In this document: one piece after another, positions 971-20,929 of the stretch | Layout: the number at the start of each line of letters is the position of its first letter | Position numbering within the stretch: the stretch's first letter is position 1 | Virus record (IMG/VR): IMGVR_UViG_3300042391_000634 | Location: 124,001-188,000 of that record | Strand: one strand, 5' to 3' | DNA: 64,000 nucleotides | Position numbers and translations under genes: made by a program | The notes under the pieces: model-generated | Database searches by the model: none | Told to the model about the DNA's origin: nothing | The model's input: only the letters and a program-made list of their open reading frames with translations

Positions 971-2746
971 ATGGGAGCATTATTAGAAAGCGGTATGGTT
1001 GGTAACATAGGTCTTAAGCACCTACGTGTTATCAAAGAAGATACCATCAAAAAATGGGACGAACTAGGATTCTTAGAAGGTCTAGAAGGTCACCAAAAAG
1101 ATAACATCGCGCAATTGTATGAAAACCAAGCGTCTTACTTAATCAACGAAGCGGCAGTAGCTGATGCGTCTGGTTCTTTCGAGACTGTAGTTTTCCCTAT
1201 CATTCGTCGTGTGTTCTCTAAATTATTAGCTAACGACATCGTGTCTGTTCAAGCTATGAACTTACCAATCGGTAAATTATTCTTCTTCATTCCTAAAATT
1301 CAGGAAAGAACTGGAACAGACCATTACTCACCTTATGGTGGAGCAAATAACGATTTAGGTTTACCTACAAATCCAACATCAGGATACCCTACAACTGCGA
1401 AAAGTCTTTACGATCGTTTTTACGAAGGATCTGACGCTAATGACCAAGGTCTTTTTGATTACTCAAAAGGTAAATATGCGGTAACAAGTTTAGTTGTTAA
1501 CGGTTTTACAACTTTTGCAAATGGTGTTGTAACTACAAGTTCATCTGCTTTAACAAGTGCAACTTGTGTAAACAAATCATATGTAATCATCGAGGTTACA
1601 GGATTTACATCGGCAGGTGCTGGTAAATTAAAAGGTGCTAACGGTAATGAAATGGATTCTGAAGAATTCTTAGCTTCATTACAAGTTACTACTACTGACG
1701 CAGGTTTGTTAGCTCACTTAGGTGTTACTGATTCAACTGCATTACCAATCAATATCGTAACTCAGAAATACGGTAAAGGTATTGTTGAATATGGTGCAAA
1801 AGCAGGTTCTGCTCAAGCTCAATATTATGATGTTTGTGATGCTGACGGTAAAATCTATATTCAAGTTGATCTTGAATCATATAGTGCAACTGCAGGTTTC
1901 ACTCCATTCACTTTAACCGGTTCAACTACACTTGCTACCTCTGAATTAGTTTCAACATTCCGTTTGTATGAGTCTTTAGAATTTGAAGAGCAAATTGGTG
2001 AAGTATCTTTCGATTTACAATCAGTAACAGTTTCTGTAACTGAAAGAAAATTAAGAGCTAGCTGGTCTCCAGAATTAGCACAAGATGTTAGTGCATTCCA
2101 CAACATCGACGCTGAAGCTGAATTAACAGCTTTATTATCAGAGCAAATCGCTGCTGAGGTTGACCGTGAAATCTTACGTGACTTACGTAAAGGTGCAGCA
2201 TGGAAAGCTAAATGGGATTACAATGAATGGAAATATGGTGGAAACTCTGGTGCAACCTTACAAGGTTATACTCAGAAAGATTGGAACCAAACTTTGGTTA
2301 CAAAAATCAACCAAATTTCTGCTCAAATCCACAAAACTACGTTAAGAGGTGGTGCTAACTGGATCGTTGTTTCTTCAGAAGTTTCTGCAGTATTTGATGA
2401 TTTAGAGTATTTCCACGTTTCTAACGCAGAACCAGAACAAGATCAGTATAACATGGGTATCGAGAAAATCGGTACAGTAGGTGGACGTTACCAAGTGTAT
2501 CGTGACCCTTACTTCCCAGCTAACAAAATCTTGATTGGTCATAAAGGTAAGTCTTTGTTAGATGCAGGTTATGTATACGCACCATATGTGCCATTACAAT
2601 TAACTCCTACAATGTACAATCCATTTAACATGACTCCGATTAAAGGTATCATGACTCGTTACGCGAAAAAAATGGTAAATAATCGCTACTTTGGCGTTAT
2701 TGACGTACAAGGTATTCAAGTGTTTGGTTTAGATACATTAAGATAA
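971..2746 (+). CDS. gp23: Major capsid protein (T4 gp23 family)
   Basis: Motifs KKWDELGFLEGL, FPIIRRVF, VSVQAMNLP, RKLRASWSPELAQD, IDAEAELTALLSEQIAAEVDREI, GYVYAPYVPL, GIMTRY. Confidence 0.97.
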   Translation: MGALLESGMVGNIGLKHLRVIKEDTIKKWDELGFLEGLEGHQKDNIAQLYENQASYLINEAAVADASGSFETVVFPIIRRVFSKLLANDIVSVQAMNLPIGKLFFFIPKIQERTGTDHYSPYGGANNDLGLPTNPTSGYPTTAKSLYDRFYEGSDANDQGLFDYSKGKYAVTSLVVNGFTTFANGVVTTSSSALTSATCVNKSYVIIEVTGFTSAGAGKLKGANGNEMDSEEFLASLQVTTTDAGLLAHLGVTDSTALPINIVTQKYGKGIVEYGAKAGSAQAQYYDVCDADGKIYIQVDLESYSATAGFTPFTLTGSTTLATSELVSTFRLYESLEFEEQIGEVSFDLQSVTVSVTERKLRASWSPELAQDVSAFHNIDAEAELTALLSEQIAAEVDREILRDLRKGAAWKAKWDYNEWKYGGNSGATLQGYTQKDWNQTLVTKINQISAQIHKTTLRGGANWIVVSSEVSAVFDDLEYFHVSNAEPEQDQYNMGIEKIGTVGGRYQVYRDPYFPANKILIGHKGKSLLDAGYVYAPYVPLQLTPTMYNPFNMTPIKGIMTRYAKKMVNNRYFGVIDVQGIQVFGLDTLR

Positions 2747-6915: not shown

Positions 6916-7115
6916 TTACCAGTATATCTTTTTTCTAATTCCTTATTAACTTTATTATATAACCCCTCAACCCCATCTAAATGACGTGTTAAATCAATAA
7001 TCAATTCCTTTGTTTTTTCAAATTCTTCTAACAATTCATCTGCAACAATGACTAAATCTTTATTAGATTTATTTCCAACATCGTTTGCTATTTCAATTAA
7101 TTTTTGACTTTCCAT
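6912..7115 (-). CDS. Hypothetical small coiled-coil protein
   Basis: 67-aa ORF overlapping the spike start (ATGA-type coupling); helical heptad pattern. Confidence 0.6.
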   Translation of the reverse strand: MESQKLIEIANDVGNKSNKDLVIVADELLEEFEKTKELIIDLTRHLDGVEGLYNKVNKELEKRYTGK

Positions 7116-7118
7116 ATT

Positions 7119-9077
7119 TTAATTTTTCATTAATGCATATGATGGTGTTCCAACAGGTCCATTAACACTTTTAAATGGTGTAATGGCTAAGTTATCGGCA
7201 AAACCTTGTACTTGTGCTGACGTTGATAAGACATGATAATTAGGTTCCCCATTTATATCTCCAGTTGGTATTCCCATATTTTGCATTTTTTCAGTTATAT
7301 CCATTGTTGTTTTAACCGCACTAAATCCAGGTAATTTACCGGCTAATAATAATAAAGGATTTGGTATATCTAAACCACCTGAAGCACTAAGTGCTCCACT
7401 AATTGCCGCACCAATTGCGGCGATAATCGCTTCACAACTGTCTAATCCTGTTTCAAGTACTTGTTTTAATAGAGCAATTAATGCTGCTATAACTAAATAA
7501 TATCTTTTTAATTTATCTTTTAATATTTTTCTAATTATTTTCATTAAGAAATTCTTAAGGTCGGCTTTAACTCTTTTCCAAAACTCCCTAATAAATTTCC
7601 AAAATAATTCTTTTATTGTACAAGTGAAGATTTTTTTAAGTTTTTTCATTAAATCTTTAGCATCAACAATTGCATTTTTAGCTCCGGCAACAAATTGTTT
7701 ATATATTATTACAAATGGTAAAAACATTTTTGGTGAAAGAATACTCATTATTAATGCTTTAGGAATATTAAAAATAAAAGATAAGTTAATTGAAATTTGA
7801 AAACTAGGTAAGTCAATTGAAAAATCTGACTGTTCATATGCATCCGATGCTGCCTTATTTAATGCACTATCTATTAATTTTCTTCTATCTTGTTTATCTT
7901 CTAAATAAACAAAATCCTCCATGTGAACTGTATTATATGGAACTTCATAGTTATTACAGTCAGCAAATTTTAACACCTTTCTTCGTCTTGCGTCTTCATC
8001 ATCTAAATCAATACCCTCAACATCATCAAAATCAAAATAAAATTCATCATTTTCTTCGTCATCATTAAATAAATTGGTTGGTGTTGAACCGGTTAATCTA
8101 CCACTATTACAGAATGCAAAAATTTTATTTAACATTCTCTCAAGATTTTGAATTGCCTCATCTAAAGACGGAGCAAAATCTAAAGGATTTTCCATACCAC
8201 TAAACGAACCACCAACACTAACACCATTTTTATCAGCAGACGCATTACATGCTTTTAATGTCATTAACATTGCCTTTTTAACAATCTCATTCAAATCTGG
8301 CATTTCTATATTTGAATAATAATCATTAAAAAAATCACCGACATTTACAAAACCATATTGACCCACCCCATTACCTTGAGTTAAACCTGTGATTTTAAAC
8401 CATTGGTGTTCTGATTGCCATGTAGAAGTAAATAAAGTTTTATTACTCGGTGTGTCATATTGATATTGGATTCCGATTGGTGTTGTTGTTCCTGAATTTA
8501 TAAATGTTTGGTATAAACCATAATTTATTTGAGCTTTATTACCATTTCTTTTTTTAGGGTCTTCATACATTATTTTACCATAGTCACTTTCAGGTGGAAC
8601 TTTAAACATACCTAAAAAATCAATTTCTCTTGGGTAAATGTTAACTTCGTCCATTTCTTGTGTTCCACCCATAACTTGATTTGTACCACAAATACCATCA
8701 TTTGCAAAAAATGCGTTTTTAACACAATCCATAAGGATTTGTTTAGCTGAATTTTTTGTAACATCAACTGAATCCAATACGTGTTGTCTAAGTCTTTGAG
8801 TTGATTGAAATCTATCGGGATCGTTAACAGTTCTACCCGCATCTAAAAATTTATTAACAACTGAAACAACTTCTTCAAATATGTTTTTTTTGTTTTTAGT
8901 TTTCGGTTTTTTGTTTCCTAATTTAGATTTAAGTTGTTCTAATTTGGTATTTAAATTTGGAAGGTTTGGTTGAAACTTTTTTAAAGCATCTTCAGGACTT
9001 ATGTTAAGATTAGCATATTTGTCTTGGTCAACACTTTTTTGTATAATATCAATAGTATTTTTTAGTGATTCAAACAT
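7119..9077 (-). CDS. Large hypothetical protein, probably structural
   Basis: 652-aa ORF coupled to the 125-aa gene under a TATTTAT box and upstream of the spike gene; no family recognised. Confidence 0.55.
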   Translation of the reverse strand: MFESLKNTIDIIQKSVDQDKYANLNISPEDALKKFQPNLPNLNTKLEQLKSKLGNKKPKTKNKKNIFEEVVSVVNKFLDAGRTVNDPDRFQSTQRLRQHVLDSVDVTKNSAKQILMDCVKNAFFANDGICGTNQVMGGTQEMDEVNIYPREIDFLGMFKVPPESDYGKIMYEDPKKRNGNKAQINYGLYQTFINSGTTTPIGIQYQYDTPSNKTLFTSTWQSEHQWFKITGLTQGNGVGQYGFVNVGDFFNDYYSNIEMPDLNEIVKKAMLMTLKACNASADKNGVSVGGSFSGMENPLDFAPSLDEAIQNLERMLNKIFAFCNSGRLTGSTPTNLFNDDEENDEFYFDFDDVEGIDLDDEDARRRKVLKFADCNNYEVPYNTVHMEDFVYLEDKQDRRKLIDSALNKAASDAYEQSDFSIDLPSFQISINLSFIFNIPKALIMSILSPKMFLPFVIIYKQFVAGAKNAIVDAKDLMKKLKKIFTCTIKELFWKFIREFWKRVKADLKNFLMKIIRKILKDKLKRYYLVIAALIALLKQVLETGLDSCEAIIAAIGAAISGALSASGGLDIPNPLLLLAGKLPGFSAVKTTMDITEKMQNMGIPTGDINGEPNYHVLSTSAQVQGFADNLAITPFKSVNGPVGTPSYALMKN

Positions 9078-9468: not shown

Positions 9469-10170
9469 TTATTCTAAAAATCCACCCAAAATACCGTCAT
9501 ATAGTTTCTTATAACGTTTAAGAGAGACTCTAATCTCTTTTGTTGATAAGGAGGTCATTTCTCGTAAAGAGAGTAAGATAAGGTTCTTATTGAATTTGTT
9601 ACCATCACCTACTTGAAATATCTTATCAAAATTACTGAAGATTTCAAGTAATGCGTAACCTAACTTTCTCTCGTTATCAGATAGATTTTTTTCTTTTTCA
9701 ATAAAATTTTCTAAATCAATTGTAAGTTTAGTGATAACAGAACTATAATCAATTACGAATTCATCCGTAACATATGAATGGTCTTTACTATCCTCAAAGT
9801 CGGAAGATATATCATCATAAGAAACCTGTCTATTCTGTTCTTTGGTATCTTTCTGTATTGCTCCCATAAGGTAGTTTTTACAGATGGTTCCAAAATATGA
9901 ATACGCTTTAGTATTCTTTGTGTGGTCAAATTTGTTAATCTTAGTTATAAGAAAAGACATTGTATCGGTATGAATTTCTTCAAATTCCATATCTTTTCTA
10001 TAAAGTTTATAACGTCGAATAATTGATTCAACCATTATAATTAGGGGTTCACGTAAATATTCATTGAATATCTTATTTCTTTCTGTTTCGTCACTACTTT
10101 CTAAGTAATTGACTACCGCCTTCTCTTGATCCTCCCCAAAATATATTTTTTGGGTTCTTGGTCTTGGCAT
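9469..10170 (-). CDS. gp55: Phage sigma factor, gp55-like (late transcription)
   Basis: Sigma region-2 pattern LIIMVESIIRRY...EEIHTDTMSFLITKINKFDHTKNTKAYSYFGTICKNYL, comparable to the gp55 F-D-x-x-K...A-Y-F-T-x-I motif; no clear region-4 HTH. Confidence 0.7.
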   Translation of the reverse strand: MPRPRTQKIYFGEDQEKAVVNYLESSDETERNKIFNEYLREPLIIMVESIIRRYKLYRKDMEFEEIHTDTMSFLITKINKFDHTKNTKAYSYFGTICKNYLMGAIQKDTKEQNRQVSYDDISSDFEDSKDHSYVTDEFVIDYSSVITKLTIDLENFIEKEKNLSDNERKLGYALLEIFSNFDKIFQVGDGNKFNKNLILLSLREMTSLSTKEIRVSLKRYKKLYDGILGGFLE

Positions 10171-10950: not shown

Positions 10951-12006
10951 TTATTTATCTTCTTGTTTTAAATTTTCTAATGCTTTTGATAATAGTTCAA
11001 TTCTTTTATTTGTAAATGAATTGAAGATAGACAAAATATTATTTTTAGTTATTTCTGTATCATATGGTAATAACGTTTCTTTCATTTTTTCTTTAACTTC
11101 GTTAGTTAATTCAATACCATCTAACCAAGCTAAAACAAATGTACCTAAAATGTCAACTAATTTATTTTCATCATATGTCCACATACCGTTTTCACTTAAC
11201 CAATCAGGTTCTATGTTTGGTATTTTACCGATAATTGGAACACCTGATTTCATTGATTCTAATGGGAATGTTCCAAATGTTGATTCGTCGTCGGCCCATA
11301 ATGAAACCATACAGTCTTTTAATCCTTCAGAGAATTCTTCATAAGTCATTTGTACCATATCTCTAAAAGTAATCCAACGTAAATGTGGATATTTTAAATA
11401 AAACTCAGAAATGAATTTTCTATGTTTAACTCTATCTCTACAACTAATTGCAATATATGGTTTAACAATATCTTCAGTAGGTTTAAAATTATCACCAATA
11501 ATTGGTGGAATAATATGAACTAACATTTCTGGAAAAATTTCATTAATATATTTTTTTGTTGCTTCAGTTGTTACAATTACACGATCAAATCCATAATCAC
11601 TCCAACGACTACCAACAGGTAATGTTTCAAAAATATATTCTTTTTGTTGTACTAACATTATTTTAGTACATCTTACATTTGCCAATTGTTGTAAAACATT
11701 TGAATAATATTCAGGAACAACAATAACGTCATCAATTGAAATATTAATCTTATCTTCTTTAATTGATACGAGTTCTAAAACATCGTATTTTTCACCCAAC
11801 CATTCTGGTTTGATGTATGATTTATCTTCTGTTAAAATTTTTGAATTATATCCATTTTCTTTTAACGTAAGTGCCATATCGTAGATATGTTTAATTGCTG
11901 CTCTCGCATTGTTTTTAGTGTCATATGTTAAAAAATATATGACATTTTCTTTTGTTTCTAACCTTCCTAAGGCTGATTCAAGTTTTTCTATGTTTTCTTT
12001 ACTCAT
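10951..12006 (-). CDS. Glycosyltransferase, GT-B fold (GT4-like)
   Basis: DDVIVVPEY and C-terminal ESTFGTFPLESMKSGVPIIG (E-x-F-G-x-x-x-L-E-A/S-M donor-binding motif). Confidence 0.8.
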   Translation of the reverse strand: MSKENIEKLESALGRLETKENVIYFLTYDTKNNARAAIKHIYDMALTLKENGYNSKILTEDKSYIKPEWLGEKYDVLELVSIKEDKINISIDDVIVVPEYYSNVLQQLANVRCTKIMLVQQKEYIFETLPVGSRWSDYGFDRVIVTTEATKKYINEIFPEMLVHIIPPIIGDNFKPTEDIVKPYIAISCRDRVKHRKFISEFYLKYPHLRWITFRDMVQMTYEEFSEGLKDCMVSLWADDESTFGTFPLESMKSGVPIIGKIPNIEPDWLSENGMWTYDENKLVDILGTFVLAWLDGIELTNEVKEKMKETLLPYDTEITKNNILSIFNSFTNKRIELLSKALENLKQEDK

Positions 12007-12283
12007 CTTCGTCTTCTATTAAAATTTGATTTTTTATTAATGTATTAAATGCAATTCTGAAAGATACCGATGTTCCCTCTTGTGCAAATTTCCCAAGTTC
12101 TTCATCTACGTCATCAATTTCACCTAAAACCCTATCCAAACACATTTTTATAATTTCGTATTTGAATATGTTCACTTCAGTTACTTCTGTTCCGTCTTCG
12201 TCTGGTATTGTTCCACCTGTTCTACATTTTTCTGTGATTCCATCAAGGTCAATGTAGTAGTTTTTTCCAAAGATTTCAACCAT
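11999..12283 (-). CDS. Hypothetical acidic protein
   Basis: 94-aa ORF filling the gap between the HAD-like and GT4 genes; overlaps both. Confidence 0.6.
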   Translation of the reverse strand: MVEIFGKNYYIDLDGITEKCRTGGTIPDEDGTEVTEVNIFKYEIIKMCLDRVLGEIDDVDEELGKFAQEGTSVSFRIAFNTLIKNQILIEDEDE

Positions 12284-12867
12284 GGTTCTTGTATTTCATT
12301 TAATTTAGTTATTTCTTTACCATAAGTAAAGAATTGATTATAAGTGGTATTAAATTTCATTCCTATTTTATTTTCGGGACATAAATCTAAAATACTTTTA
12401 TTGTCGGTAATCCATACATCACATTTACTCCAACAATCTTCAATATCTTTAGTTTTAATAAACTTAATATTATTACCAAGATATCCATTTTTTGATAAAA
12501 AGAATAGTGTTGCGGGTTTTGATTTACCTAACTCGTTTAACCCAACTAATGTAAAGTTGTGTTCAGTATTTTCAAATAAAATTTTGTGTAAATCTGTGAA
12601 AGTGGTGGAATAACTTATTCCGGCATGACCAAAAATCTCAATAGGGTATTCAATGAATAAAAAGTTTTCAAACTCTTCTTGTGATTGAAATTTGTAAGAA
12701 TTTAAAAGATTATCATTTTGAATAGGTTCAGTAACCGCATATTCAAATGTGTTTTCTTCTTCACCTTCAATTATAATATCACTATTAAAATATGATTCAT
12801 TATAATGATAATCAAACTTTTGAATTGTATTTCTTAAAACACCATCAATACTAATATATATTTCCAT
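12181..12867 (-). CDS. HAD-superfamily 5'(3')-deoxyribonucleotidase-like protein with degenerate catalytic motifs
   Basis: N-terminal IYISIDGVLRN (canonical DxDGV) and DVWITDN (canonical D-x-x-I-D-D). Confidence 0.6.
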   Translation of the reverse strand: MEIYISIDGVLRNTIQKFDYHYNESYFNSDIIIEGEEENTFEYAVTEPIQNDNLLNSYKFQSQEEFENFLFIEYPIEIFGHAGISYSTTFTDLHKILFENTEHNFTLVGLNELGKSKPATLFFLSKNGYLGNNIKFIKTKDIEDCWSKCDVWITDNKSILDLCPENKIGMKFNTTYNQFFTYGKEITKLNEIQEPWLKSLEKTTTLTLMESQKNVEQVEQYQTKTEQK

Positions 12868-12904
12868 TATAAAAATATACGATGATTAAAATCATAAGTA
12901 AATA

Positions 12905-13639
12905 CTAATCATATCTTTGTAAAATATCACCAATAATTGGATTACGAACAATGTCTTGCATTCCAAACTCAAAAATTCCAATTCCTTTAACATCTTGTAA
13001 TCTCATTTTAGCATCGAATAAACCAGATTTAGTTTTATCTCTAAATTTATCTGATTGTTCAAGATCTCCTGAAATAAAGAATTTTGAATTAAATCCAATA
13101 CGAGTTAATAATAACTTAATCTGTGATGGGGTGGCATTTTGAGCTTCTTCAAAAACAAGAATAGTATTATCTACGTTCCAACCTCTCATATAAGCAAGAG
13201 CAGCAACTTCAATGTAACCTTGGTCTTTTAATTCTTCGCGAGCCTCTTTACCAATAATTTTATTTAATAGATAATATGATGGATAAATGTATGGGTCTAA
13301 TTTCTCTTCTAAACCCCCTGGAAGTGACCCTAATTTCTCCTCAGCTTCAACTGCGGGTCTTACTATGATAATCTTCTCATACTTGTTAGAATCGTCGTAT
13401 AATAGGTCTACCGCACGTTTCATTGCTATGTAGGACTTACCTACACCTGCTGGACCGAAACATAATGTAATTTGATTTTCTCCAAGAATGTTCCAATATA
13501 TTTCTTGGTTTTTTGTAAGGAACTTTTCTTTAGGACGTTTAATGATTTGTCTAATCCTATCTTTATGTGATATCTTCTTCTCTTCTACTAATACAGGTGG
13601 TGGTTGGTGAGATGTTTTGATTCTTGTTTTATAAGCCAA
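12905..13639 (-). CDS. phoH: PhoH-family ATPase
   Basis: Walker A FGPAGVGKS, IIIVRPAVE, LGSLPG, AYMRGW, EEAQN, GDLEQSD; TTG start. Confidence 0.95.
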   Translation of the reverse strand: MAYKTRIKTSHQPPPVLVEEKKISHKDRIRQIIKRPKEKFLTKNQEIYWNILGENQITLCFGPAGVGKSYIAMKRAVDLLYDDSNKYEKIIIVRPAVEAEEKLGSLPGGLEEKLDPYIYPSYYLLNKIIGKEAREELKDQGYIEVAALAYMRGWNVDNTILVFEEAQNATPSQIKLLLTRIGFNSKFFISGDLEQSDKFRDKTKSGLFDAKMRLQDVKGIGIFEFGMQDIVRNPIIGDILQRYD

Positions 13640-13682
13640 AGTGAATAGTTTTAATTGTTCCGTTTATTGTTTATAAATATCA

Positions 13683-14330
13683 TCAAACACCGGTAGATCC
13701 AAAACCACCTGACCCTCTTTCTGTATTAGATAATTCAGGAACCTCAGTCATATATATGGTAGGATAAGGTAATATGATAATCTGAGCACCTCTTTCACCC
13801 ACTTTATATTTAATTGAGTCTAAACCTTGAGTTTTCTTGAATGTTGCTTGTAATTCTCCTCTATATCCACTATCAATAACACCAACACAATTTGATAATA
13901 TTAAATCTTGATTTCTAACTGATGAACGAGGAAATACTAACCCAACATAACCTTTAGGAATTTCCATCGCAATACCAAAACCATATGAAACACTAAAAGA
14001 TGTATTTTCGATTTCTTTTGTAATGGTTAAATCCATACCAGCATCACCAACTTTTGAGTATGAAGGAATAACCGCATTAGAATCTAATTTTTTTACTTTA
14101 ACTAAAACACCACCACCCGTCATCGTTGATTGAGTGTTAATTATATTTTGTTCAGTAACAGGAGGAGTTCCTAAATCTTCTTGTAATTTATTTAATAAAT
14201 CATTTAATTCAGTAACAAAATTTAAATCAATTTCATCGTCATCCGATCCTATTGTTTTTTCAAAACCTTCTAATTGTTTTAGATAGTTTTCAACATCTTC
14301 TTTTTCCATTCTATTTGTTTTTCTTTTCAT
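13683..14330 (-). CDS. dut: Trimeric dUTPase with an acidic N-terminal extension
   Basis: All five motifs: GDAGMDL, FPRSS, GVIDSGYRGE, GAQII, RGSGGFGSTG. Confidence 0.96.
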   Translation of the reverse strand: MKRKTNRMEKEDVENYLKQLEGFEKTIGSDDDEIDLNFVTELNDLLNKLQEDLGTPPVTEQNIINTQSTMTGGGVLVKVKKLDSNAVIPSYSKVGDAGMDLTITKEIENTSFSVSYGFGIAMEIPKGYVGLVFPRSSVRNQDLILSNCVGVIDSGYRGELQATFKKTQGLDSIKYKVGERGAQIIILPYPTIYMTEVPELSNTERGSGGFGSTGV

Positions 14331-14526
14331 CCAACCATTTATCTAACGCCTTAATTCTTTGTTTAAGGTTATCGTCTTGGGGTCGTAAACATATCTCTAC
14401 AAATAAATCGGTAATCCTTACCAACTCTTCAAGAGTAACAGAAACACCAACTGATGTTACATATTCCAATGCCATTTTACTTTGTGATTGACGCATGATT
14501 TGTATCTCACGACTATAAAATTCCAT
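14311..14526 (-). CDS. Hypothetical protein
   Basis: 71-aa ORF in the leftward operon, overlapping the dut start. Confidence 0.6.
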   Translation of the reverse strand: MEFYSREIQIMRQSQSKMALEYVTSVGVSVTLEELVRITDLFVEICLRPQDDNLKQRIKALDKWLDEKKNK

Positions 14527-14546
14527 ATCAGTTGGTGTTTAAATTG

Positions 14547-14783
14547 TTATTTACTTTTGTAATACTCGGGTGTGTTCTTTTCGTCGATAACACACTCAAT
14601 TGGAAATTTAGCGACACTTAAACTTTCGCTACCTCTAATGTCACCTTCACGATATCTTGCCGCAACAATTGTTGCTTCTTCTACCGATTCGGCTTGAATT
14701 ACGTATTTTACTTTTTTAACACGAGGGTTTCCTTCTCTGTCCATTTGTTCGGTTTCATAACCGATTGTAACTTGATAATACAT
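14547..14783 (-). CDS. DUF4494-like small protein
   Basis: MYYQVTIGYE...KKVKYVIQAESVEEA resembles the Bacteroidota DUF4494 pattern (W/Y-F/Y-x-x-x-V-x-Y-E ... Y-L-V-x-A-x-S-x-x-E-A). Confidence 0.5.
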   Translation of the reverse strand: MYYQVTIGYETEQMDREGNPRVKKVKYVIQAESVEEATIVAARYREGDIRGSESLSVAKFPIECVIDEKNTPEYYKSK

Positions 14784-14790
14784 GTTGTTT

Positions 14791-16014
14791 CTATTTAATT
14801 ATTGATTTAAAAAATTCTACTCTATCTTTACATACTTTCTTTAATGAGTATGTATCTTTAACTGTTTCATATAAACGGTTTCCTAAGTCTTCAATCATAT
14901 TAGGATTTTCCACTAAACGTTTCATATGTTTCGCCCAATCTTTATGATTCTTTTTTGTTCCTACTAATAACGCATTTCCTTTATCGTTAAATTTACCTTC
15001 ATCAACTGCCGAAATTAAATCAATTGTAAAAGGGTCAACATCACTTGCAATAATTGCCTTCTTAAAAAATCCAGCCTCAATTATTTTCAATTGTGATTTA
15101 TTTGCGTTAAACACAGATTCAACTAACGGTGCTAATGAAACATCAAAGGTATTATAATTTGTCGCGTAGGTATTAATATTTTTAGTCCATCTTCTTCTAT
15201 ATGGTTCGTTTTCATCATTATATGGAGTTTCCACAAATGTTTCTAAATAACTTTTATATTCGGGACTTAACACTTTATAATTGTCTGTAAAGAATTTTTC
15301 ATACTTATACCAAACAGTCTCTATAGGTTGGATAGGTCTATTTTTTTGTTCTTTTGTTTCTGGATTAATTTCAGTAACACTTCCTCTTAAATCAAATCCA
15401 CATAAAACAAATTGAACTTTGTCTTTAAAAGAATTGTGTGTGGATGAAATACCATTTTCCATTAATTCTAAATCATAAAGATGTGATGAACCACCTAACC
15501 AACCAAATCTAATTTTGTCTGATTTTACAATTTCATTTTTAAATTGTGGTTCATCTTCATTAACTGCATTTGGGAAAACCTCAACATTCTTTACTTTTAA
15601 TTTATCCTTAATTGTTTTTGCAAAAATAGATGTTGTAGTTGTTACATAATCAACCTCCTTTAACATCTCCATCTTCATCTCACCTATTTTATTATTCTTA
15701 ATTGCATAATACATTGGGTGTCTTTGGTCTACAAACCATAAATCGTCAATATCCATTATGGTAATAATACCTTTAGATTTTAACCATTTAATTCTTTGAA
15801 TATTATTAGCGTGGTTTGTTTGATGAATAAATGTATGAAATACAACAATATTATAGTTTAAAAAAACTTCATCTCTATCCTCAACGTTATATGATATATC
15901 AACATGGACATCATCAGAATGTTTATCACCAATTAAAACATATGGATCTGTTATTCTAAATTTACCCACACCAAATTTATCTGAGGGAATTGCTAAAATT
16001 CTTATTTTCGACAT
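14791..16014 (-). CDS. Glycosyltransferase, GT-B fold (GT4-like)
   Basis: IMDIDDLW, VDYVTTTT, VFPNAV, RFGWLGGSSH, DVSLAPL...NKSQLKIIEAG. Confidence 0.85.
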   Translation of the reverse strand: MSKIRILAIPSDKFGVGKFRITDPYVLIGDKHSDDVHVDISYNVEDRDEVFLNYNIVVFHTFIHQTNHANNIQRIKWLKSKGIITIMDIDDLWFVDQRHPMYYAIKNNKIGEMKMEMLKEVDYVTTTTSIFAKTIKDKLKVKNVEVFPNAVNEDEPQFKNEIVKSDKIRFGWLGGSSHLYDLELMENGISSTHNSFKDKVQFVLCGFDLRGSVTEINPETKEQKNRPIQPIETVWYKYEKFFTDNYKVLSPEYKSYLETFVETPYNDENEPYRRRWTKNINTYATNYNTFDVSLAPLVESVFNANKSQLKIIEAGFFKKAIIASDVDPFTIDLISAVDEGKFNDKGNALLVGTKKNHKDWAKHMKRLVENPNMIEDLGNRLYETVKDTYSLKKVCKDRVEFFKSIIK

Positions 16015-16066: not shown

Positions 16067-16636
16067 TTACTTTGCTTTATTTACTCCTGTGATTTTACCT
16101 TTGAATATCGAATCTCCTACCTTTAATACTAAATTTTCATTGATTGAAGATGTTGTGGATGCAGTAAGGATTTGATTTAATTTTTCATCCATTACTTTAC
16201 GAACTGTATTCTCAATAAGAACGGCCATTGCATTCATATCAATATTGTTATTAACAATAGTTTGTTTTGGTTGTGCCGATGGTCTTGTTGCCACACCTTC
16301 TTGTTCCATTAAACGTTTTGCACCTTTAACAAAATCCATATCTAAAGTATCATTTAAAGAAATTTGTTGAATTGGATTTTCCATCATTGCTTTTTTAATT
16401 GCGTCAGGTAACTTTGAATTTTGAATTTTATCAACACTCATATTAGCACCTACAGGTCTTGTATTAGGTTGTTGTGGGGTCTGCATTTCCATTAATTCTG
16501 ATGGGTCGGATCTTAACATTTCACTATTAACATGACCTCTTTCATAATTTCCACCATCCACTTTGTTCATAATTTTTTTAGCTTGAACTAATTTTTTCAT
16601 TAAATCGTTAGACGATATTGTTCCTTGTTGTGCCAT
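16067..16636 (-). CDS. Hypothetical protein (late, possibly virion)
   Basis: 189-aa ORF with a TATTTAT box at 16641-16647 (minus). Confidence 0.55.
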   Translation of the reverse strand: MAQQGTISSNDLMKKLVQAKKIMNKVDGGNYERGHVNSEMLRSDPSELMEMQTPQQPNTRPVGANMSVDKIQNSKLPDAIKKAMMENPIQQISLNDTLDMDFVKGAKRLMEQEGVATRPSAQPKQTIVNNNIDMNAMAVLIENTVRKVMDEKLNQILTASTTSSINENLVLKVGDSIFKGKITGVNKAK

Positions 16637-16669
16637 GTTAATAAATATTTTATATAATAATAAACCTTT

Positions 16670-17404
16670 TTAAGAAAACATTAAACGCTTAATATTTTTA
16701 ATACTTTCTTGTAAATTTTTATTTTCTTCATCTTCCTCAGGATTAACAACCGGTTTTTCTTTCTGTTTTGGTTGTGGTAATTCTTTTACTTTTGGTTCCT
16801 CAGGTGTTGTTGGTTCAGGTTTTGATACAACTTTTTCTGGTTTAGTTTGAGGTTTTGGTTGTGGTAGTTCCGTTGTCTTCGGTTCCGTAGGTGTTACTTC
16901 GGGTTCCGTAGGGGTTACCTCAGGTTCCGTAGGGGTTACCTCAGGTTCCGTTTGAGTTTTAGGTTTAATTATTCTTGGTTTCTTAACCTCAGGTTTTTTA
17001 GTCCAATCTGTTGTTACATATGTTACACTTAGTCCGCTATCATCACCTTCTTTATAACCTGGTCTTTTTTCATCAAAAATTTCATCTGTTATTTCTGTTC
17101 CACTCATTCTACTTAACATAAATGTCCTCCATCCATGTTTGGCAAATCCTTTTTTTGATACGGACGGTGGTTGAACAAACGCTCTCATTACTAAATTACC
17201 CTTTTTACTTAATCCCAAAGCAACCACTTCCGCCTTTACACGATATCCAGCCTTTACACTATTTTTTTTAGGTTTTCTTGGCCCTGAATAATAGAATGTA
17301 ATTTTCTTCCTATTTTTGATGGCATCAACAATAGGTTTTGTTCTTGTCGTTTTAAGTGCAAGTTGTTCTTCTAATATTTCAAATATGGTATTTGTAAAAC
17401 TCAT
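16670..17404 (-). CDS. Stand-alone WYL-domain protein with a Pro/Glu/Thr-rich tail
   Basis: IVDAIKNRKKITFYY...GYRVKAEVVALG...GNLVMRAF...GWRTFMLSRM fits the WYL fold pattern (AI-x-x-R-x-x-I-x-F-x-Y ... R ... R-x-F-x-L-x-R-I); no HTH. Confidence 0.72.
   Translation of the reverse strand: MSFTNTIFEILEEQLALKTTRTKPIVDAIKNRKKITFYYSGPRKPKKNSVKAGYRVKAEVVALGLSKKGNLVMRAFVQPPSVSKKGFAKHGWRTFMLSRMSGTEITDEIFDEKRPGYKEGDDSGLSVTYVTTDWTKKPEVKKPRIIKPKTQTEPEVTPTEPEVTPTEPEVTPTEPKTTELPQPKPQTKPEKVVSKPEPTTPEEPKVKELPQPKQKEKPVVNPEEDEENKNLQESIKNIKRLMFS
16881..16950 (-). repeat. 21-bp tandem repeat, 3 copies (TEPEVTP), in the WYL gene
   Basis: GGTTCCGTAGG(T/G)GTTAC(T/C)TC(G/A) units on the plus strand. Confidence 0.85.
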
Positions 17405-18096
17405 TATGTTGTTGGGTGTCTATTATATTCTTTTTTAGTATTATAACTATTTTTACCTGTATTTTCAGTTCTAGTTAATATATCTGTTTTAGAACCTATG
17501 GTTCCATTTTCATCTTTTTGTCCTTTACCATATTCATCACCGTCGGATAGGGCGTCGGGATTTTTACTATTATAAAGATTTTTTTTAGTAAATTTATTTT
17601 TAACTAAATTTTCTGTTCTTTTTAATATATCAGTTTTAGAACCGACTTCTCCTGTTTCACCTTTTTGCCCTTTACCAAATTCGTCACCATTAGATAATGC
17701 ATTAGGGTTATTAGTATTATATTGATTATTTTTACCGTAATGATTTTTACTCATTAATAAATTTCTGTTTGCAATATCAATAGAGGTTCCTATAGCGACA
17801 TTATCTTCTACTTGACCTCTACCTTTTTCATCTCCATCAGCTAACGCATTTGGATTTGTAATACCATATTGGTTATTTTCATTATATGAATTTCTTCCTA
17901 AACTTGAAATTCTATTTTGAATGTCTGTTGTTGAACCTACAGTGCCGGTGTCTCCCTTTTGTCCCTTACCTTTTTCATCTCCACTAGATAATGAGTTTAC
18001 ATTCTGACTATTGTATAGGTTTTTTTCACCATAAGAATTTCTTGTTACAGATTCTTTTCTAAATTGTTCTGATATTTGGTCTAATTTTGTTGCCAT
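17404..18096 (-). CDS. Protein built of about 4.3 tandem 49-aa repeats
   Basis: Unit R-x5-(R/K)N-x-(Y/F)-x3-N-x-Y-x3-N-(P/V)-(N/D)-(A/S)-L-x-x-GDE-x-G-(K/R)-GQ-x6-G-(S/T)-x-x-DI repeats with an exact 49-aa period. Confidence 0.85.
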   Translation of the reverse strand: MATKLDQISEQFRKESVTRNSYGEKNLYNSQNVNSLSSGDEKGKGQKGDTGTVGSTTDIQNRISSLGRNSYNENNQYGITNPNALADGDEKGRGQVEDNVAIGTSIDIANRNLLMSKNHYGKNNQYNTNNPNALSNGDEFGKGQKGETGEVGSKTDILKRTENLVKNKFTKKNLYNSKNPDALSDGDEYGKGQKDENGTIGSKTDILTRTENTGKNSYNTKKEYNRHPTT

Positions 18097-18097
18097 A

Positions 18098-18589
18098 TTA
18101 TAACATTAATTTTTTTATTCTTTCAAGTTGTTCAAATAACCCCGTTAATTTTATTGATGATATTGAATTTTTTTCTGAATTAGAATTAAATTTAAATGAA
18201 GGTAACCAACTTGATTTTTTTGTATGTTTCTTTAAGAAACTATTTTTTCTTTCTCCTGTGGTGCTTGAAATATCATCAGATTGTTTTCTACCTTCTTTTC
18301 TATTTTGTATTAAATCTCTTTCTCCTTGGAGATGTTGTTTAGACCAATTGTCCATTAAATCACCACCAGCCAAGTCATACCTAATTTTATCAGCAACTTT
18401 ATCCATACTTTGTATGTCATGAATAATACGTTTAAGTTGACCATATGTTACTTTTTTATCGGTTAAGAGTTTTTTAGCTCTCATTACCCCATGCATATTT
18501 TGACCGTTAAGACCTGTAACCGTGTGGTTGATCTTATCTAAAATGTTCTGTGGTAAATCAAAGTCCCTATTTTTTAACTCTTTATTCAT
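18098..18589 (-). CDS. Hypothetical basic protein, probable head-associated
   Basis: 163-aa ORF ending LFEQLERIKKLML, in a late-box operon. Confidence 0.55.
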   Translation of the reverse strand: MNKELKNRDFDLPQNILDKINHTVTGLNGQNMHGVMRAKKLLTDKKVTYGQLKRIIHDIQSMDKVADKIRYDLAGGDLMDNWSKQHLQGERDLIQNRKEGRKQSDDISSTTGERKNSFLKKHTKKSSWLPSFKFNSNSEKNSISSIKLTGLFEQLERIKKLML

Positions 18590-19337: not shown

Positions 19338-19353
19338 CTAAATGGACTTTTAT

Positions 19354-19384
19354 ATAAATATCAAATGTTATGAAAGATATTTAT
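19354..19384. promoter_or_regulatory. Back-to-back TATTTAT late-promoter boxes (representative of 20 such sites)
   Basis: ATAAATA at 19354-19360 drives the leftward operon; TATTTAT at 19378-19384 drives the rightward structural genes. Confidence 0.7.
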
Positions 19385-19390
19385 ATTATA

Positions 19391-20929
19391 ATGAATAGAC
19401 AGAATATTTTAAACTATTACGGATCTAAATTGGATTTAAAGTTAGATTCATCGGAACTTTACGACTATCAGTTAACTACAAATGAGGTTGATTACGATAT
19501 AGATGTGTTAGATTTATCTACCCCAATCGTATATAGTGCACTTACAATTAACGATAGTTTAGAAGATTTGGGTTGCGCCAAAACAAGAATAACTCTTGTT
19601 GAGGATAACATAAATGATTTGTTAACTCCATATTCATATTTAGGATTATCAATGACTTTATCATATAATAATTTTGTTTCTTATTTTGGAACGGGTTATA
19701 CGTATACAATTTTAGATGGTAATAGATTTAAATTTACACTTTTAAACAATGAAAATCACTATTTTAAAATATACGGTTATAATCATACCGGTTTAACTTC
19801 TACAGTTTTATCAGGTTATACGGAATCAGAACTAATTTCAGGATTTACCACAAATGTTTACGTGGACAGAAGAAATATAGTAAATGTTTTTGCCTGTTCA
19901 TCACAAGCACCAAAAACAAACGTAAAACCTTGGGCGTTTAATTTTAATGAGGGTTTGGGAACCGATAAATGCACCCCAATATTAAAAAGAAGAACTGAAA
20001 AGGGATGGTCTTTGGATTTTATATTTAATAGAGAAAACTTATCTTGGTCAAATGGTAGTGTGTTTTATTATGTGGGTGTTAGAGGAGATAATGATATTGC
20101 CGATTATAGTGATAACAATTTATCTTTTGGATTTACATCAGATGGTAGAATTAAATGGACATCAAAACATTACTCAGGAACATGTGTAAATGATACATCA
20201 TATAATGAATCGTATTACACCTCGAGTGGACAAACTCCGACTTTATGTACAACGGGATTAACAAAAGATTTTAATGTTACAATTGTTTTTAATAGGTATA
20301 AACGTTACACCGATTGTGATATTGAAAATATGGGTGGACAAAATGATTTAATTATTGGTCCTCACCCTACGGATTATATTATTAATACTGGAGTCACTGC
20401 GGTTACATCTACTCAAGTAGTAACAGGATATTTGATTACGAACTCTTTAGATGTTTTAACAGGTGCAACACCTGTATATCAATATATTGAAACATTAAAT
20501 AAAAAATGGTCAGACGAAAGAGATAGAAGATTAGGAACCCTAAAAATATATTTAAATGGAAATTTAGTTTATAAATTAGAAGATTGGGAAGAGGTTATTC
20601 CTTCAAAAAGGGGAGAACAACCGTTTATTCAATCTTGGGGAGGGGGAACCGGATTAATGGGTGGAGTTCATGAAGGTGTTTGTTGTTTTAATATTAAATC
20701 AATAAAATATTATGAGGAACCATTAGATTTTATTCACGTTAAACATAACTTTATAACAAGATTAGATAACTTTGATTTTGAAATATGTAATGCACCTTGT
20801 GTGGATGATGTATATCAATATGTCCCACCAACCGCAACACCTACCCCTGTACCAACTAGTACCCCAACTCCAACCCCAACATCAACCCCAACTCCCACTC
20901 CAACGGCAACGCCTACACCGACAATATAA
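19391..20929 (+). CDS. Virion protein with a LamG/concanavalin-like domain and a C-terminal Pro/Thr tail
   Basis: NVTIVFNRY...GTLKIYLNGNLVYK...NIKSIKYYEEPL is LamG-like. The ORF track starts at 19370, but a TATTTAT box at 19378-19384 favours the ATG at 19391. Confidence 0.6.
   Translation: MNRQNILNYYGSKLDLKLDSSELYDYQLTTNEVDYDIDVLDLSTPIVYSALTINDSLEDLGCAKTRITLVEDNINDLLTPYSYLGLSMTLSYNNFVSYFGTGYTYTILDGNRFKFTLLNNENHYFKIYGYNHTGLTSTVLSGYTESELISGFTTNVYVDRRNIVNVFACSSQAPKTNVKPWAFNFNEGLGTDKCTPILKRRTEKGWSLDFIFNRENLSWSNGSVFYYVGVRGDNDIADYSDNNLSFGFTSDGRIKWTSKHYSGTCVNDTSYNESYYTSSGQTPTLCTTGLTKDFNVTIVFNRYKRYTDCDIENMGGQNDLIIGPHPTDYIINTGVTAVTSTQVVTGYLITNSLDVLTGATPVYQYIETLNKKWSDERDRRLGTLKIYLNGNLVYKLEDWEEVIPSKRGEQPFIQSWGGGTGLMGGVHEGVCCFNIKSIKYYEEPLDFIHVKHNFITRLDNFDFEICNAPCVDDVYQYVPPTATPTPVPTSTPTPTPTSTPTPTPTATPTPTI

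What the first reader, a model, noticed from the sequence alone, without database searches (positions are those of the whole stretch)
16670..17404. Stand-alone WYL domain that looks built for packaging into the virion
Seen: short leader ending ILEE, then a WYL-like domain with no HTH, a TEPEVTP/PK-rich flexible linker, and the scaffold-like C-terminal helix LQESIKNIKRLM; last gene of a late-box operon. Known: WYL domains sense ssDNA or nucleic-acid ligands and control anti-phage and DNA-damage regulators (BrxR, CapW, PafBC, DriD). Inference: an injected WYL protein could sequester the signal, poison host WYL regulators by heterodimerisation, or bind the incoming genome. That would be a pre-emptive counter-defence delivered with the DNA, which I do not know to have been described.
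Basis: partly seen in the sequence, partly recalled or inferred. Interest (0 to 1): 0.75.

Follow-up and report, generated by a model that had tools for sequence, protein, structure and literature searches.

The report
Phage stand-alone WYL protein, likely packaged
A 335-kb freshwater T4-like phage makes, from a late-type operon, a small basic WYL (nucleic-acid-sensing) domain with no DNA-binding HTH, flanked by a T4-style cleavable leader, a long proline-rich spacer and a conserved C-terminal helix. This fits a DNA-binding protein loaded into the phage head, but loading has not been shown.

Summary
ORF 16670..17404 (-) encodes 244 aa. Residues ~19-131 form a WYL/Sm-like domain: AF2 pLDDT 87, and the best PDB matches are all BrxR, CapW, DriD or PafBC (VIA Z 8-9.8). 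There is no HTH and no WCX domain. Around the domain sit:
- a 13-residue acidic leader ending hydrophobic-hydrophobic-x-Glu (97% of 163 full-length homologues);
- a ~93-residue P/E/K/T spacer of variable length;
- a 12-residue amphipathic basic C-terminal tip (95% of homologues), also carried by the 163-aa protein two genes upstream.

The phage has a T4-type prohead protease, scaffold and gp23-like capsid protein. The four-gene cluster starts behind the same box (TATTTATA) that precedes the portal, protease and scaffold genes. Two other cluster members have T4-like leaders.

Best reading (confidence ~0.4): an Ip-like internal head protein whose payload binds single-stranded nucleic acid.

Packaging, cleavage, ligand and any counter-defence role are inferred. 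No cultured relative or proteome exists. Poisoning host WYL regulators by heterodimerisation is unlikely, because the dimerising parts are missing. Injected counter-defence as a concept is already known (T4 Ip1-3). The WYL payload with this architecture is new, so I rate it a new variant of a known kind.

The parts
16670..17404 (-). Gene for the 244-aa stand-alone WYL protein
   Evidence: ORF list and sequence. Single copy in the 335,630-bp phage genome. More than 900 homologous 90%-identity clusters in metagenomes.
17366..17404 (-). N-terminal leader, residues 1-13 (MSFTNTIFEILEE). Acidic, ends phi-phi-x-Glu. Candidate prohead-protease site after E13.
   Evidence: Conservation of P4, P3 and P1 with variable P2. 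Present in 158 of 163 homologues. Charge -3.5. T4 sites are of the same form. Cleavage itself is inferred.
17012..17350 (-). WYL / Sm-like domain, residues ~19-131, pI 10.2
   Evidence: Structure prediction and fold searches. Pfam WYL in 66 of 95 relatives. Conserved Y39, R55, G64, R74, W92, R/K93.
16721..16999 (-). P/E/K/T-rich spacer, residues 136-228, with two ELPQPK motifs. Variable in length between homologues.
   Evidence: Composition and alignment A1.
16881..16951 (.). 21-bp tandem repeat x3.4 that encodes the TEPEVTP repeats of the spacer
   Evidence: Tandem Repeats Finder: 94% matches, score 121.
16679..16714 (-). C-terminal amphipathic tip, residues 231-242 (LQESIKNIKRLM)
   Evidence: Present in 155 of 163 homologues. 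A 12-mer matrix scores 36.6 here and 31.6 on the 163-aa neighbour; the next hit in the genome scores 18.9. Hydrophobic moment 0.60.
18098..18589 (-). 163-aa protein of the same cluster, built the same way (folded N-domain, S/K-rich linker, same tip)
   Evidence: Its N-domain fold gives weak matches to C-terminal domains of prohead-protease/XkdF fusion proteins.
18104..18139 (-). Tip of the 163-aa protein (LFEQLERIKKLM)
   Evidence: Conserved in every related locus examined.
17404..18096 (-). 230-aa repeat protein with a T4-CTS-like leader (MATKLDQISE; homologues MATQLEILAE)
   Evidence: 147-bp tandem repeat. T4 CTS MKTYQEFIAE (PMC8442874).
18582..19337 (-). 251-aa first gene of the cluster, leader MNNFIKQVIEE
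19353..19360 (-). Late-type box TATTTATA (reads TATAAATA on the + strand), starting 23 nt upstream of the 251-aa gene's ATG (box spans -23 to -16)
   Evidence: Motif enrichment 53 of 195 against 1.6 expected, and its presence before the portal, protease and scaffold genes.
16640..16647 (-). Variant box TATTTATT, 3 nt upstream of the next gene (189 aa, 16067..16636). Argues that the WYL gene ends a four-gene unit, but no terminator is present.
   Evidence: Sequence. TATTTATT is enriched, 11 against 1.1 expected. Terminator scan negative.
16067..16636 (-). 189-aa conserved neighbour, always downstream of the WYL gene in related phages. Function unknown.
   Evidence: Synteny. No family hit.
971..2746 (+). 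gp23-like major capsid protein. With the scaffold (ends at 948) and the T4-type prohead protease just upstream of the window, this is the head module that the proposed mechanism needs.
   Evidence: PF07068 211 bits. PF03420 72.5 bits at G000 123018-123485. Protein sequences.

Best explanation
The gene encodes a late protein with four modules: a 13-residue acidic leader, a basic minimal WYL domain, a long extended Pro/Glu/Lys spacer, and a 12-residue amphipathic basic C-terminal helix.

The most likely life history, step by step:
- It is made with the head proteins.
- It is recruited into the assembling prohead core by the leader and/or the tip. The tip is shared with the co-transcribed 163-aa protein.
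- The gp21-type prohead protease removes the leader after Glu13, as it does for T4 internal proteins.
- The basic mature protein stays in the head with the DNA and probably leaves with it at infection.
- Its WYL domain keeps most of the arginine-lined face that BrxR, CapW and DriD use to hold single-stranded DNA. Its job is therefore to bind single-stranded or otherwise exposed nucleic acid, either on the phage genome or in the newly infected cell.

Shown: the fold, the missing HTH and WCX, the conservation of leader, spacer and tip, the late-type promoter box, the T4-type head module, and the conserved gene order.

Inferred: targeting, cleavage, packaging, ejection, ligand and biological purpose.
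For: Fold and pocket:
- In the profile alignment to BrxR, R74 falls on the second Arg of the RWHVR motif and R93 on the Arg of FRxF. PMC11662680 identifies these as ssDNA contacts.
- R55, R74 and R/K93 are kept in 94, 89 and 94 of 95 relatives.
- The domain has pI 10.2 and charge +14.

Head module:
- Peptidase_S77, a gp23-like capsid protein and an acidic scaffold are present.

Leader:
- Conserved phi-phi-x-E with variable P2 and a variable-length gap after it.
- T4 gp22, gp23, gp24 and the Ip signal end the same way (PMC8442874; PMC5694885).
- Relatives of ~125 aa keep a 13-aa leader (MKLxx..IIxE) without spacer or tip, while ~100-aa ones lack it.
- Two other cluster members have leaders of this kind.
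- Across the genome, such leaders number 31 against 16.9 +/- 3.9 in shuffles.
- They are 2.8 times commoner directly behind the late-type box (Fisher p 0.013).

Promoter:
- The TATTTATA box is shared with portal, protease and scaffold and is absent from the replication genes.

Tip:
- Only this protein and its 163-aa neighbour carry it.
- The scaffold tail shares the core RIKxMM in three genomes.
- The 163-aa N-domain weakly resembles domains fused to prohead proteases.

Conservation:
- Gene order 251-163-230-WYL-189 is kept in about 30 contigs.
Against: - There is no virion proteome and no cultured relative.
- The leader could instead be a structural or dimerising helix. VIA-align lays model residues 1-125 on the linker-helix plus WYL region of PafBC and DriD.
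- The leader differs from the commonest shared leader of this genome (MKLxDIIxE).
- The capsid protein's own maturation site could not be fixed, so the protease's exact specificity here is unknown.
- Tip similarity to the scaffold tail is limited to six residues and scores badly with the 12-mer matrix (-6.2).
- In other phage lineages, related WYL domains lack the leader and lie among ligase, kinase and lysis genes.
- The cluster lies next to non-structural genes (glycosyltransferase, dUTPase, PhoH, gp55-like).
- Complex prediction for the WYL protein with the 163-aa protein gave no answer and counts neither way.
Confidence: 0.4

Rival explanations
1. It is a late cytoplasmic nucleic-acid-binding adaptor that is not packaged. 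It would work like an SSB: a binding domain, a disordered spacer and a C-terminal tip that docks on a partner. With the 163-aa protein it would mark or protect single-stranded regions, nicks or ends of replicated DNA during concatemer processing, repair or packaging.
For: - The domain-spacer-tip layout occurs in both tip-bearing proteins.
- The ssDNA-contact arginines are conserved.
- Related WYL domains in other huge phages sit beside DNA and RNA ligase-like genes, and in another lineage near a polynucleotide kinase.
- Nothing shows the protein is in virions.
Against: - It does not explain the separately conserved acidic leader ending phi-phi-x-E, or why co-operonic proteins carry T4-type leaders.
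- Expression is from the box used by head genes, not with the replication genes.
Confidence: 0.27
2. It is a cytoplasmic 'signal sponge'. The free WYL domain soaks up the single-stranded DNA fragments that host BrxR/CapW-type repressors sense, so defence operons stay repressed. No packaging is needed.
For: - It has the same fold and most of the same binding face as the host sensors.
- ssDNA is the ligand of CapW, BrxR and DriD (PMC11662680; PMC13622015).
Against: - Late expression is the wrong time to stop induction of defences.
- PMC13622015 reports that derepression is not needed to block the first infection.
- The spacer, tip and leader are left unexplained.
- No host or defence system is known for this phage.
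Confidence: 0.1
3. The amphipathic, basic C-terminal helix is a membrane anchor of the MinD/FtsA kind. It would tether the WYL domain, on a long rigid spacer, to the inner membrane, for example at head-assembly sites or against superinfecting DNA.
For: - Hydrophobic moment is 0.55-0.60 with flanking Lys/Arg.
- The Glu-Pro/Lys-Pro-rich spacer resembles spacers that span a distance (own knowledge of TonB).
- T4 head assembly starts at the membrane (PMC5694885).
Against: - An amphipathic helix fits a protein groove equally well.
- The tip is highly sequence-specific (L-Q/F-E-x-I/L-x-R/K-I-K-x-L-M), more than membrane helices usually are.
- There is no experimental or comparative support.
Confidence: 0.1
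4. It is a split WYL regulator. The 163-aa neighbour supplies a DNA-binding domain, and the two proteins pair through their identical tips to regulate phage genes in response to ssDNA.
For: - Co-conserved neighbours carry the same tip.
- Two weak AFDB matches of the 163-aa fold are named 'DNA-binding protein'.
Against: - No HTH was recognised in the 163-aa model, and its PDB fold search gave nothing.
- The complex prediction gave no answer.
- The tips are both strongly basic.
- No operator-like repeats were looked for or seen.
Confidence: 0.05

Closest known systems
WYL domains of BrxR, CapW, DriD and PafBC (HTH-WYL-WCX regulators)
   Same: Sm-like barrel preceded by a helix. These are the best structural matches. 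The Arg of the FRxF strand and the second Arg of RWHVR are kept, and the domain is basic. They bind ssDNA (PMC11662680).
   Different: No wHTH, no two-helix linker domain and no WCX, so no evident way to bind promoters or to form their domain-swapped dimer. The W-Y-L triplet itself is L-V-M, and the first Arg of RWHVR is Asn70. It has extra modules (leader, spacer, tip). It is phage-encoded and expressed late.
Minimal stand-alone WYL proteins of cellular genomes (AFDB clusters such as H0HJ55, 95 aa)
   Same: Same minimal domain, including the C-terminal RPGY..GD..M strand region. TM 0.84 by the hit. Sequence relatives of ~100 aa were found.
   Different: They have no leader, spacer or tip. Their function is not known either.
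T4 internal proteins Ip1-Ip3 and other gp21-processed head proteins
   Same: A small basic protein behind a ~10-20-residue N-terminal signal that ends hydrophobic-x-Glu, in a phage with a Peptidase_S77 protease and gp22/gp23-type head module, with late expression (PMC8442874; PMC5694885). T4 Ips are injected and block GmrSD nucleases (PMC12373910).
   Different: No sequence or fold relation to any T4 Ip. The leader is 13 aa rather than 10 and has a different sequence. There is an additional spacer and C-terminal tip. Packaging is not demonstrated.
C-terminal docking peptides: scaffold C-terminal helices and encapsulin cargo-loading peptides (own knowledge)
   Same: A folded cargo, then a flexible linker, then a short conserved C-terminal peptide. 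This phage's scaffold ends with a related core, R-I/V/M-K-x-L/M-M.
   Different: Only six residues are shared with the scaffold tail. No binding partner was identified.
SSB-type architecture (own knowledge)
   Same: A nucleic-acid-binding fold, then a low-complexity linker, then a conserved C-terminal tip used to dock partners.
   Different: Sm/WYL fold rather than OB fold. The tip is basic and amphipathic rather than acidic.

Membership tests
WYL domain (Pfam PF13280) | Score above Pfam's gathering threshold | tested here: inconclusive
   The query scores 17.1-19.1 bits against 21.8. However, 66 of 95 relatives match at E<=0.01, best 2.5e-8.
WYL domain (Pfam PF13280) | Sm-like five-stranded barrel with a preceding helix, structurally closest to known WYL domains | tested here: met
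   pLDDT 87. The Foldseek top 10 and VIA-align top 12 are all BrxR, CapW, DriD or PafBC, Z 7.7-9.8. AFDB WYL clusters match at E down to 4e-8.
WYL domain (Pfam PF13280) | Conserved ligand-face residues (Ser/Thr after the strand-1 Tyr, R-W-H-V-R arginines, Arg of FRxF) | tested here: inconclusive
   Judged by the HMM alignment to 7qfz and column counts. Y39 95/95, R74 89/95 and R/K93 94/95 are kept. The first Arg is Asn70 (70/95). S40 is variable. The W-Y-L triplet is L-V-M. No ligand was tested.
HTH-WYL-WCX transcription regulators (BrxR, CapW, PafBC, DriD) | N-terminal winged HTH | tested here: not met
   Only 18 residues precede the helix-plus-barrel. No HTH family hit. The model shows one leader helix only.
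HTH-WYL-WCX transcription regulators (BrxR, CapW, PafBC, DriD) | C-terminal WCX domain and linker domain that make the dimer | tested here: not met
   After residue ~131 the sequence is a P/E/K spacer. Structural matches end at about residue 125.
T4-type internal / prohead-processed head proteins | Genome encodes a gp21-type (Peptidase_S77) prohead protease with scaffold and gp23-like capsid protein | tested here: met
   PF03420 72.5 bits. PF07068 211 bits. A 420-aa acidic scaffold lies between them.
T4-type internal / prohead-processed head proteins | Short N-terminal signal ending hydrophobic-x-Glu | tested here: met
   MSFTNTIFEILEE. P4 42/47, P3 43/47 and P1 Glu 42/47 with variable P2. The T4 comparators were read from NC_000866.
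T4-type internal / prohead-processed head proteins | Cleaved by the prohead protease and present in virions | not testable with these tools
   No cultured relative. No proteome is available.
T4-type internal / prohead-processed head proteins | Expressed with the head genes | tested here: inconclusive
   The TATTTATA box is shared with portal, protease and scaffold. Timing was not measured. Lake metatranscriptome libraries hold only a few read-sized pieces of the gene.
Scaffold-type C-terminal docking helix | Tail matches the phage's own scaffold tail and binds the capsid protein | tested here: inconclusive
   The core RIKxL/MM is shared, but the 12-mer matrix gives the scaffold tail -6.2. Binding was not tested.

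The most novel reading that the evidence does not exclude
A virion-delivered single-stranded-DNA 'blindfold'. The processed WYL domain would enter the cell with the genome and occupy the very ligand (ssDNA ends or fragments of the incoming or attacked DNA) that host BrxR/CapW-type WYL repressors read. The cell would then fail to raise BREX, CBASS or other WYL-controlled defences. Alternatively, it would cap exposed single-stranded parts of the genome against nucleases. This would be the first injected mimic of a host immune sensor domain.
Probability: 0.12. Interest if true: 0.85.

Novelty: new variant of a known kind. Interest (0 to 1): 0.55.

Why it matters
WYL domains are known almost only as sensor modules of bacterial regulators that switch on anti-phage and DNA-damage responses. 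Here a phage lineage that is common in lake metagenomes (more than 900 sequence clusters) keeps a bare WYL domain under strong constraint and equips it with what look like head-targeting signals.

If the protein is packaged, three things follow:
- The T4 idea of injected 'internal proteins' extends to a distant group of ~300-kb phages.
- That class gains its first member with a recognisable, ligand-binding fold.
- There is a concrete route to test whether phages interfere with ssDNA sensing by host immunity.

Even if it is not packaged, it defines a new, abundant architecture (WYL, spacer, tip) together with a partner protein that shares the tip. Both can be tested by simple binding assays.

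Tried and rejected
- **Plain T4 late box.** TATAAATA on the coding strand is not enriched. The real upstream motif is its complement, TATTTATA.
- **Cultured relatives.** tblastn of the WYL protein, the 189-aa and 230-aa neighbours and two distant family members against 50,697 phage records gave nothing except one unannotated 636-kb metagenomic phage. No virion proteome could therefore be consulted.
- **Context of distant family members.** Their contigs were too short to help.
- **Clamp-binding tail.** No gp45 C-domain hit was found, and no polymerase or gp55-like tail matches the tip. The idea was dropped.
- **First tip matrix.** It mixed two registers and was discarded and replaced. That replacement also showed that my first impression of a strong scaffold-tail match was overstated.
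- **Complex prediction (WYL plus 163-aa).** It gave no answer and is not used as evidence.
- **Atlas search of the 163-aa protein.** Only unnamed viral clusters came back. Its PDB fold search was empty.
- **Alignment-based locus search.** It failed for lack of a conserved stretch. The single-protein search worked.
- **Two 965-aa ORFs in the window.** They are unrelated.
- **Capsid protein maturation site.** It could not be fixed by alignment to T4 gp23. The candidates are LINE|A and GSFE|T.

Full report
**What is there**

The window lies in a 335,630-bp virus record with 31% G+C. On the minus strand, 16670..17404 encodes a 244-aa protein. Its ATG overlaps the stop of the upstream gene by one base. 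The protein has four parts:
- residues 1-13, MSFTNTIFEILEE, net charge -3.5;
- residues ~19-131, a basic domain (pI 10.2, charge +14);
- residues 136-228, a spacer with 22 Pro, 20 Asp+Glu and 17 Lys+Arg, partly encoded by a 21-bp tandem repeat;
- residues 231-242, LQESIKNIKRLM, a strongly amphipathic basic helix.

**The domain is WYL**

- Pfam WYL is below threshold on the query alone, but 66 of 95 relatives match it, best E 2.5e-8.
- A profile of the family finds BrxR (7qfz) and PafBC as its best PDB sequences, though weakly.
- An AlphaFold2 model built on 95 sequences has pLDDT 87 and pTM 0.78.
- Foldseek against the PDB ranks BrxR, CapW, DriD and PafBC first, all at probability 1.0.
- VIA-align gives Z 7.7-9.8 for the twelve best entries, all WYL proteins, ahead of Sm and Hfq.
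- AlphaFold DB clusters return stand-alone WYL proteins of 95-150 aa.
- Nothing resembling a winged HTH or a WCX domain is present.

In the alignment to BrxR, R74 falls on the second arginine of the RWHVR motif and R93 on the arginine of the FRxF strand. The CapW-ssDNA structure identifies these as DNA contacts (PMC11662680). R55, R74 and R/K93 are kept in 94, 89 and 94 of 95 relatives. The first RWHVR arginine is Asn70, and the W-Y-L triplet is L-V-M. Binding of single-stranded nucleic acid is therefore likely but untested.

**The family**

More than 900 clusters at 90% identity match the domain, and 144 representatives at 50% identity do. Of 163 full-length close homologues, 158 have the leader and 155 have the tip, while length ranges from 225 to 367 aa because the spacer varies.

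In the leader, P4 and P3 are hydrophobic in 42 and 43 of 47 representatives. P2 is free. P1 is Glu in 42, and a gap of variable length follows.

More distant relatives of ~125 aa keep a 13-residue leader of the same form (MKLxx..IIxE) but have no spacer or tip. Relatives of ~100 aa start directly at the domain. The leader is thus a separable add-on.

**The phage and the operon**

- Just upstream of the window lie a portal gene, a Peptidase_S77 (T4 gp21-type) prohead protease and a 420-aa hyper-acidic scaffold. The gp23-like capsid protein follows at window 971..2746.
- A gp55-like late sigma factor, a gp32-like SSB, UvsX, DnaB, ribonucleotide reductase and baseplate wedge proteins are also present.
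- The nearest cultured capsid proteins are from Microcystis phage Mel-JY01 and Flavobacterium phage immuto, at about 41-42% identity.

The octamer TATTTATA, the reverse complement of the T4 late box, is in 53 of 195 upstream regions against 1.6 expected, mostly 12 nt before the ATG. It precedes the portal, protease and scaffold genes, several large structural-looking genes, and the 251-aa gene that heads the cluster 251-163-230-WYL. It is absent from the replication genes.

The four genes overlap or nearly touch. No terminator follows the WYL gene. The next gene (189 aa) has its own variant box 3 nt from its ATG. The gene order 251-163-230-WYL-189-glycosyltransferase is kept in about 30 contigs of 300-kb-class phages.

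**Signals that point to the head**

T4 head proteins cut by gp21 end their propeptides with hydrophobic-x-Glu:
- gp24, MAKINELLRE|S;
- gp22, MLKEQLIAE|A;
- gp23..SFLTE|AEIGG;
- the Ip signal, MKTYQEFIAE (PMC8442874).

The signals are 10-20 residues long (PMC5694885).

In this cluster the 230-aa repeat protein begins MATKLDQISE (homologues MATQLEILAE). The 251-aa protein begins MNNFIKQVIEE, and the WYL protein begins MSFTNTIFEILEE.

Across the genome such leaders are about twice as common as in shuffled N-termini (31 against 16.9 +/- 3.9). They are 2.8-fold enriched directly behind the late-type box (p 0.013).

Nine accessory genes elsewhere share the leader MKLxDIIxE on otherwise largely unrelated proteins. 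Their synonymous codons differ, so the conservation is at the peptide level. None of the nine has a homologue in a related 310-kb genome. This recalls the variable Ip loci of T-even phages.

**The tip**

A 12-residue matrix built from the family scores 36.6 on the WYL protein and 31.6 on the 163-aa protein of the same cluster. The next hit scores 18.9, at the N-terminus of an unrelated 181-aa protein.

The 163-aa protein has the same plan of folded N-domain, S/K-rich linker and tip. Its fold weakly resembles domains appended to prohead-protease/XkdF proteins.

The scaffold ends FSRIKEMMRKIK, and in two related genomes FKRVKDLMSKMQ and FKRMKDLMSKIK. This shares only the core with the tip, so 'scaffold-like' is a hint and not a match.

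**Weighing**

Together these features fit a protein that is made late, taken into the prohead core, trimmed after Glu13 and kept with the DNA, like T4 Ips. Its payload would bind exposed single-stranded nucleic acid. I put this at about 0.4. Every step after 'made from a late-type operon' is inference.

Points against:
- The leader may be a structural helix.
- The protease's exact specificity here is unknown.
- Related WYL domains in other phages lack the leader and sit among ligase, kinase and lysis genes.

The main rival is a non-packaged SSB-like adaptor. A cytoplasmic ssDNA sponge, a membrane-tethered form and a split regulator are less likely.

The claim that injected counter-defence is undescribed is wrong (PMC12373910).

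I found no paper on a phage-encoded stand-alone WYL protein in the searchable library.

**Environment**

Two lake-water metatranscriptome libraries hold a few read-sized pieces of the WYL and 251-aa genes. This places the phage in fresh water, but it proves neither transcription nor its timing.

Noticed in passing
window 19353-19360, 19378-19385 and genome-wide (G000): The upstream motif TATTTATA, the reverse complement of the T4 late promoter TATAAATA, is found in 53 of 195 upstream regions against 1.6 expected. It peaks 12 nt before the ATG, so transcripts may be nearly leaderless. It marks portal, protease, scaffold and other structural genes but not replication genes.
   Followed up: partly
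window 19370-19393: The 519-aa ORF listed from 19370 probably starts at the second ATG (19391). The box GATATTTATAT lies at 19375-19385 inside the first seven codons, and some homologues start at the later Met.
   Followed up: partly
G000 genome-wide (e.g. upstream of 6147-7499, 39631-40185, 311155-313086): TAnnTTTG octamers (TATCTTTG 8 against 0.5 expected; TATATTTG 10 against 0.9) lie upstream of a different gene set. This is the -7 box of Bacteroidota promoters (own knowledge) and suggests a Bacteroidota host and host-polymerase early genes.
   Followed up: no
G000 15550, 18951, 21498, 21952, 41170, 42494, 44070, 46935, 48155 (outside the window; loci L049, L050): Nine accessory genes share the N-terminal peptide MKLxD-I/L-I/L-x-E on largely unrelated proteins (only three of them show a weak shared motif). 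One has DUF723/treble-clef zinc-ribbon repeats. Conservation is at the peptide level and not the DNA level, and most sit behind the late-type box. None has a homologue in a related 310-kb genome. They are possibly a set of head-targeted cargo proteins like the T-even Ip loci.
   Followed up: partly
window 17404-18096 (-): The 230-aa protein is built of about four ~49-aa repeats (..N-Y..N.NALSDGDE-GKGQ..G..GS.TDI..R), seen as a 147-bp DNA repeat. Its leader (MATKLDQISE; homologues MATQLEILAE) is close to the T4 capsid-targeting sequence MKTYQEFIAE. No family or cultured-phage match.
   Followed up: partly
window 18098-18589 (-): The 163-aa protein has a confident helical N-domain (pLDDT 73-94 over residues 1-95). 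It gives weak fold matches to C-terminal domains of prohead serine protease and XkdF fusion proteins, and to proteins named 'DNA-binding protein'.
   Followed up: partly
G000 40623-41168 (locus L050:623-1165): A 181-aa protein begins MNLQEDIQRIKEVM, the tip motif placed at the N-terminus (matrix score 18.9). It has a weak, sub-threshold Pfam hit to the prokaryotic STING domain (E 0.0085, 16.5 bits against 27.1).
   Followed up: no
G000 123686-124948 (window up to 948): The scaffold protein (420 aa) has a ~200-residue hyper-acidic D/E/S/T/M low-complexity core. Its conserved basic C-terminal tail is ENPQF-x-R-I/V/M-K-x-L/M-M in three genomes.
   Followed up: partly
window 10951-16014 (-): Downstream on the same strand lie a glycosyltransferase (phrog_7162, E 4e-38), a dUTPase and, by sequence motifs alone (no family search was run), a PhoH-like ATPase. 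A gp55-like late sigma factor is at 9469-10170. These are auxiliary and regulatory genes interleaved with the late cluster.
   Followed up: no
L080 (LR756504.1 330597-331853): In a 636-kb metagenomic phage the related WYL domain is embedded in a 418-aa multidomain protein with a P/E/K-rich C-terminus. It lies next to an ATP-dependent DNA ligase-like gene and an RNA ligase-like gene (both identified by eye, no family search).
   Followed up: partly
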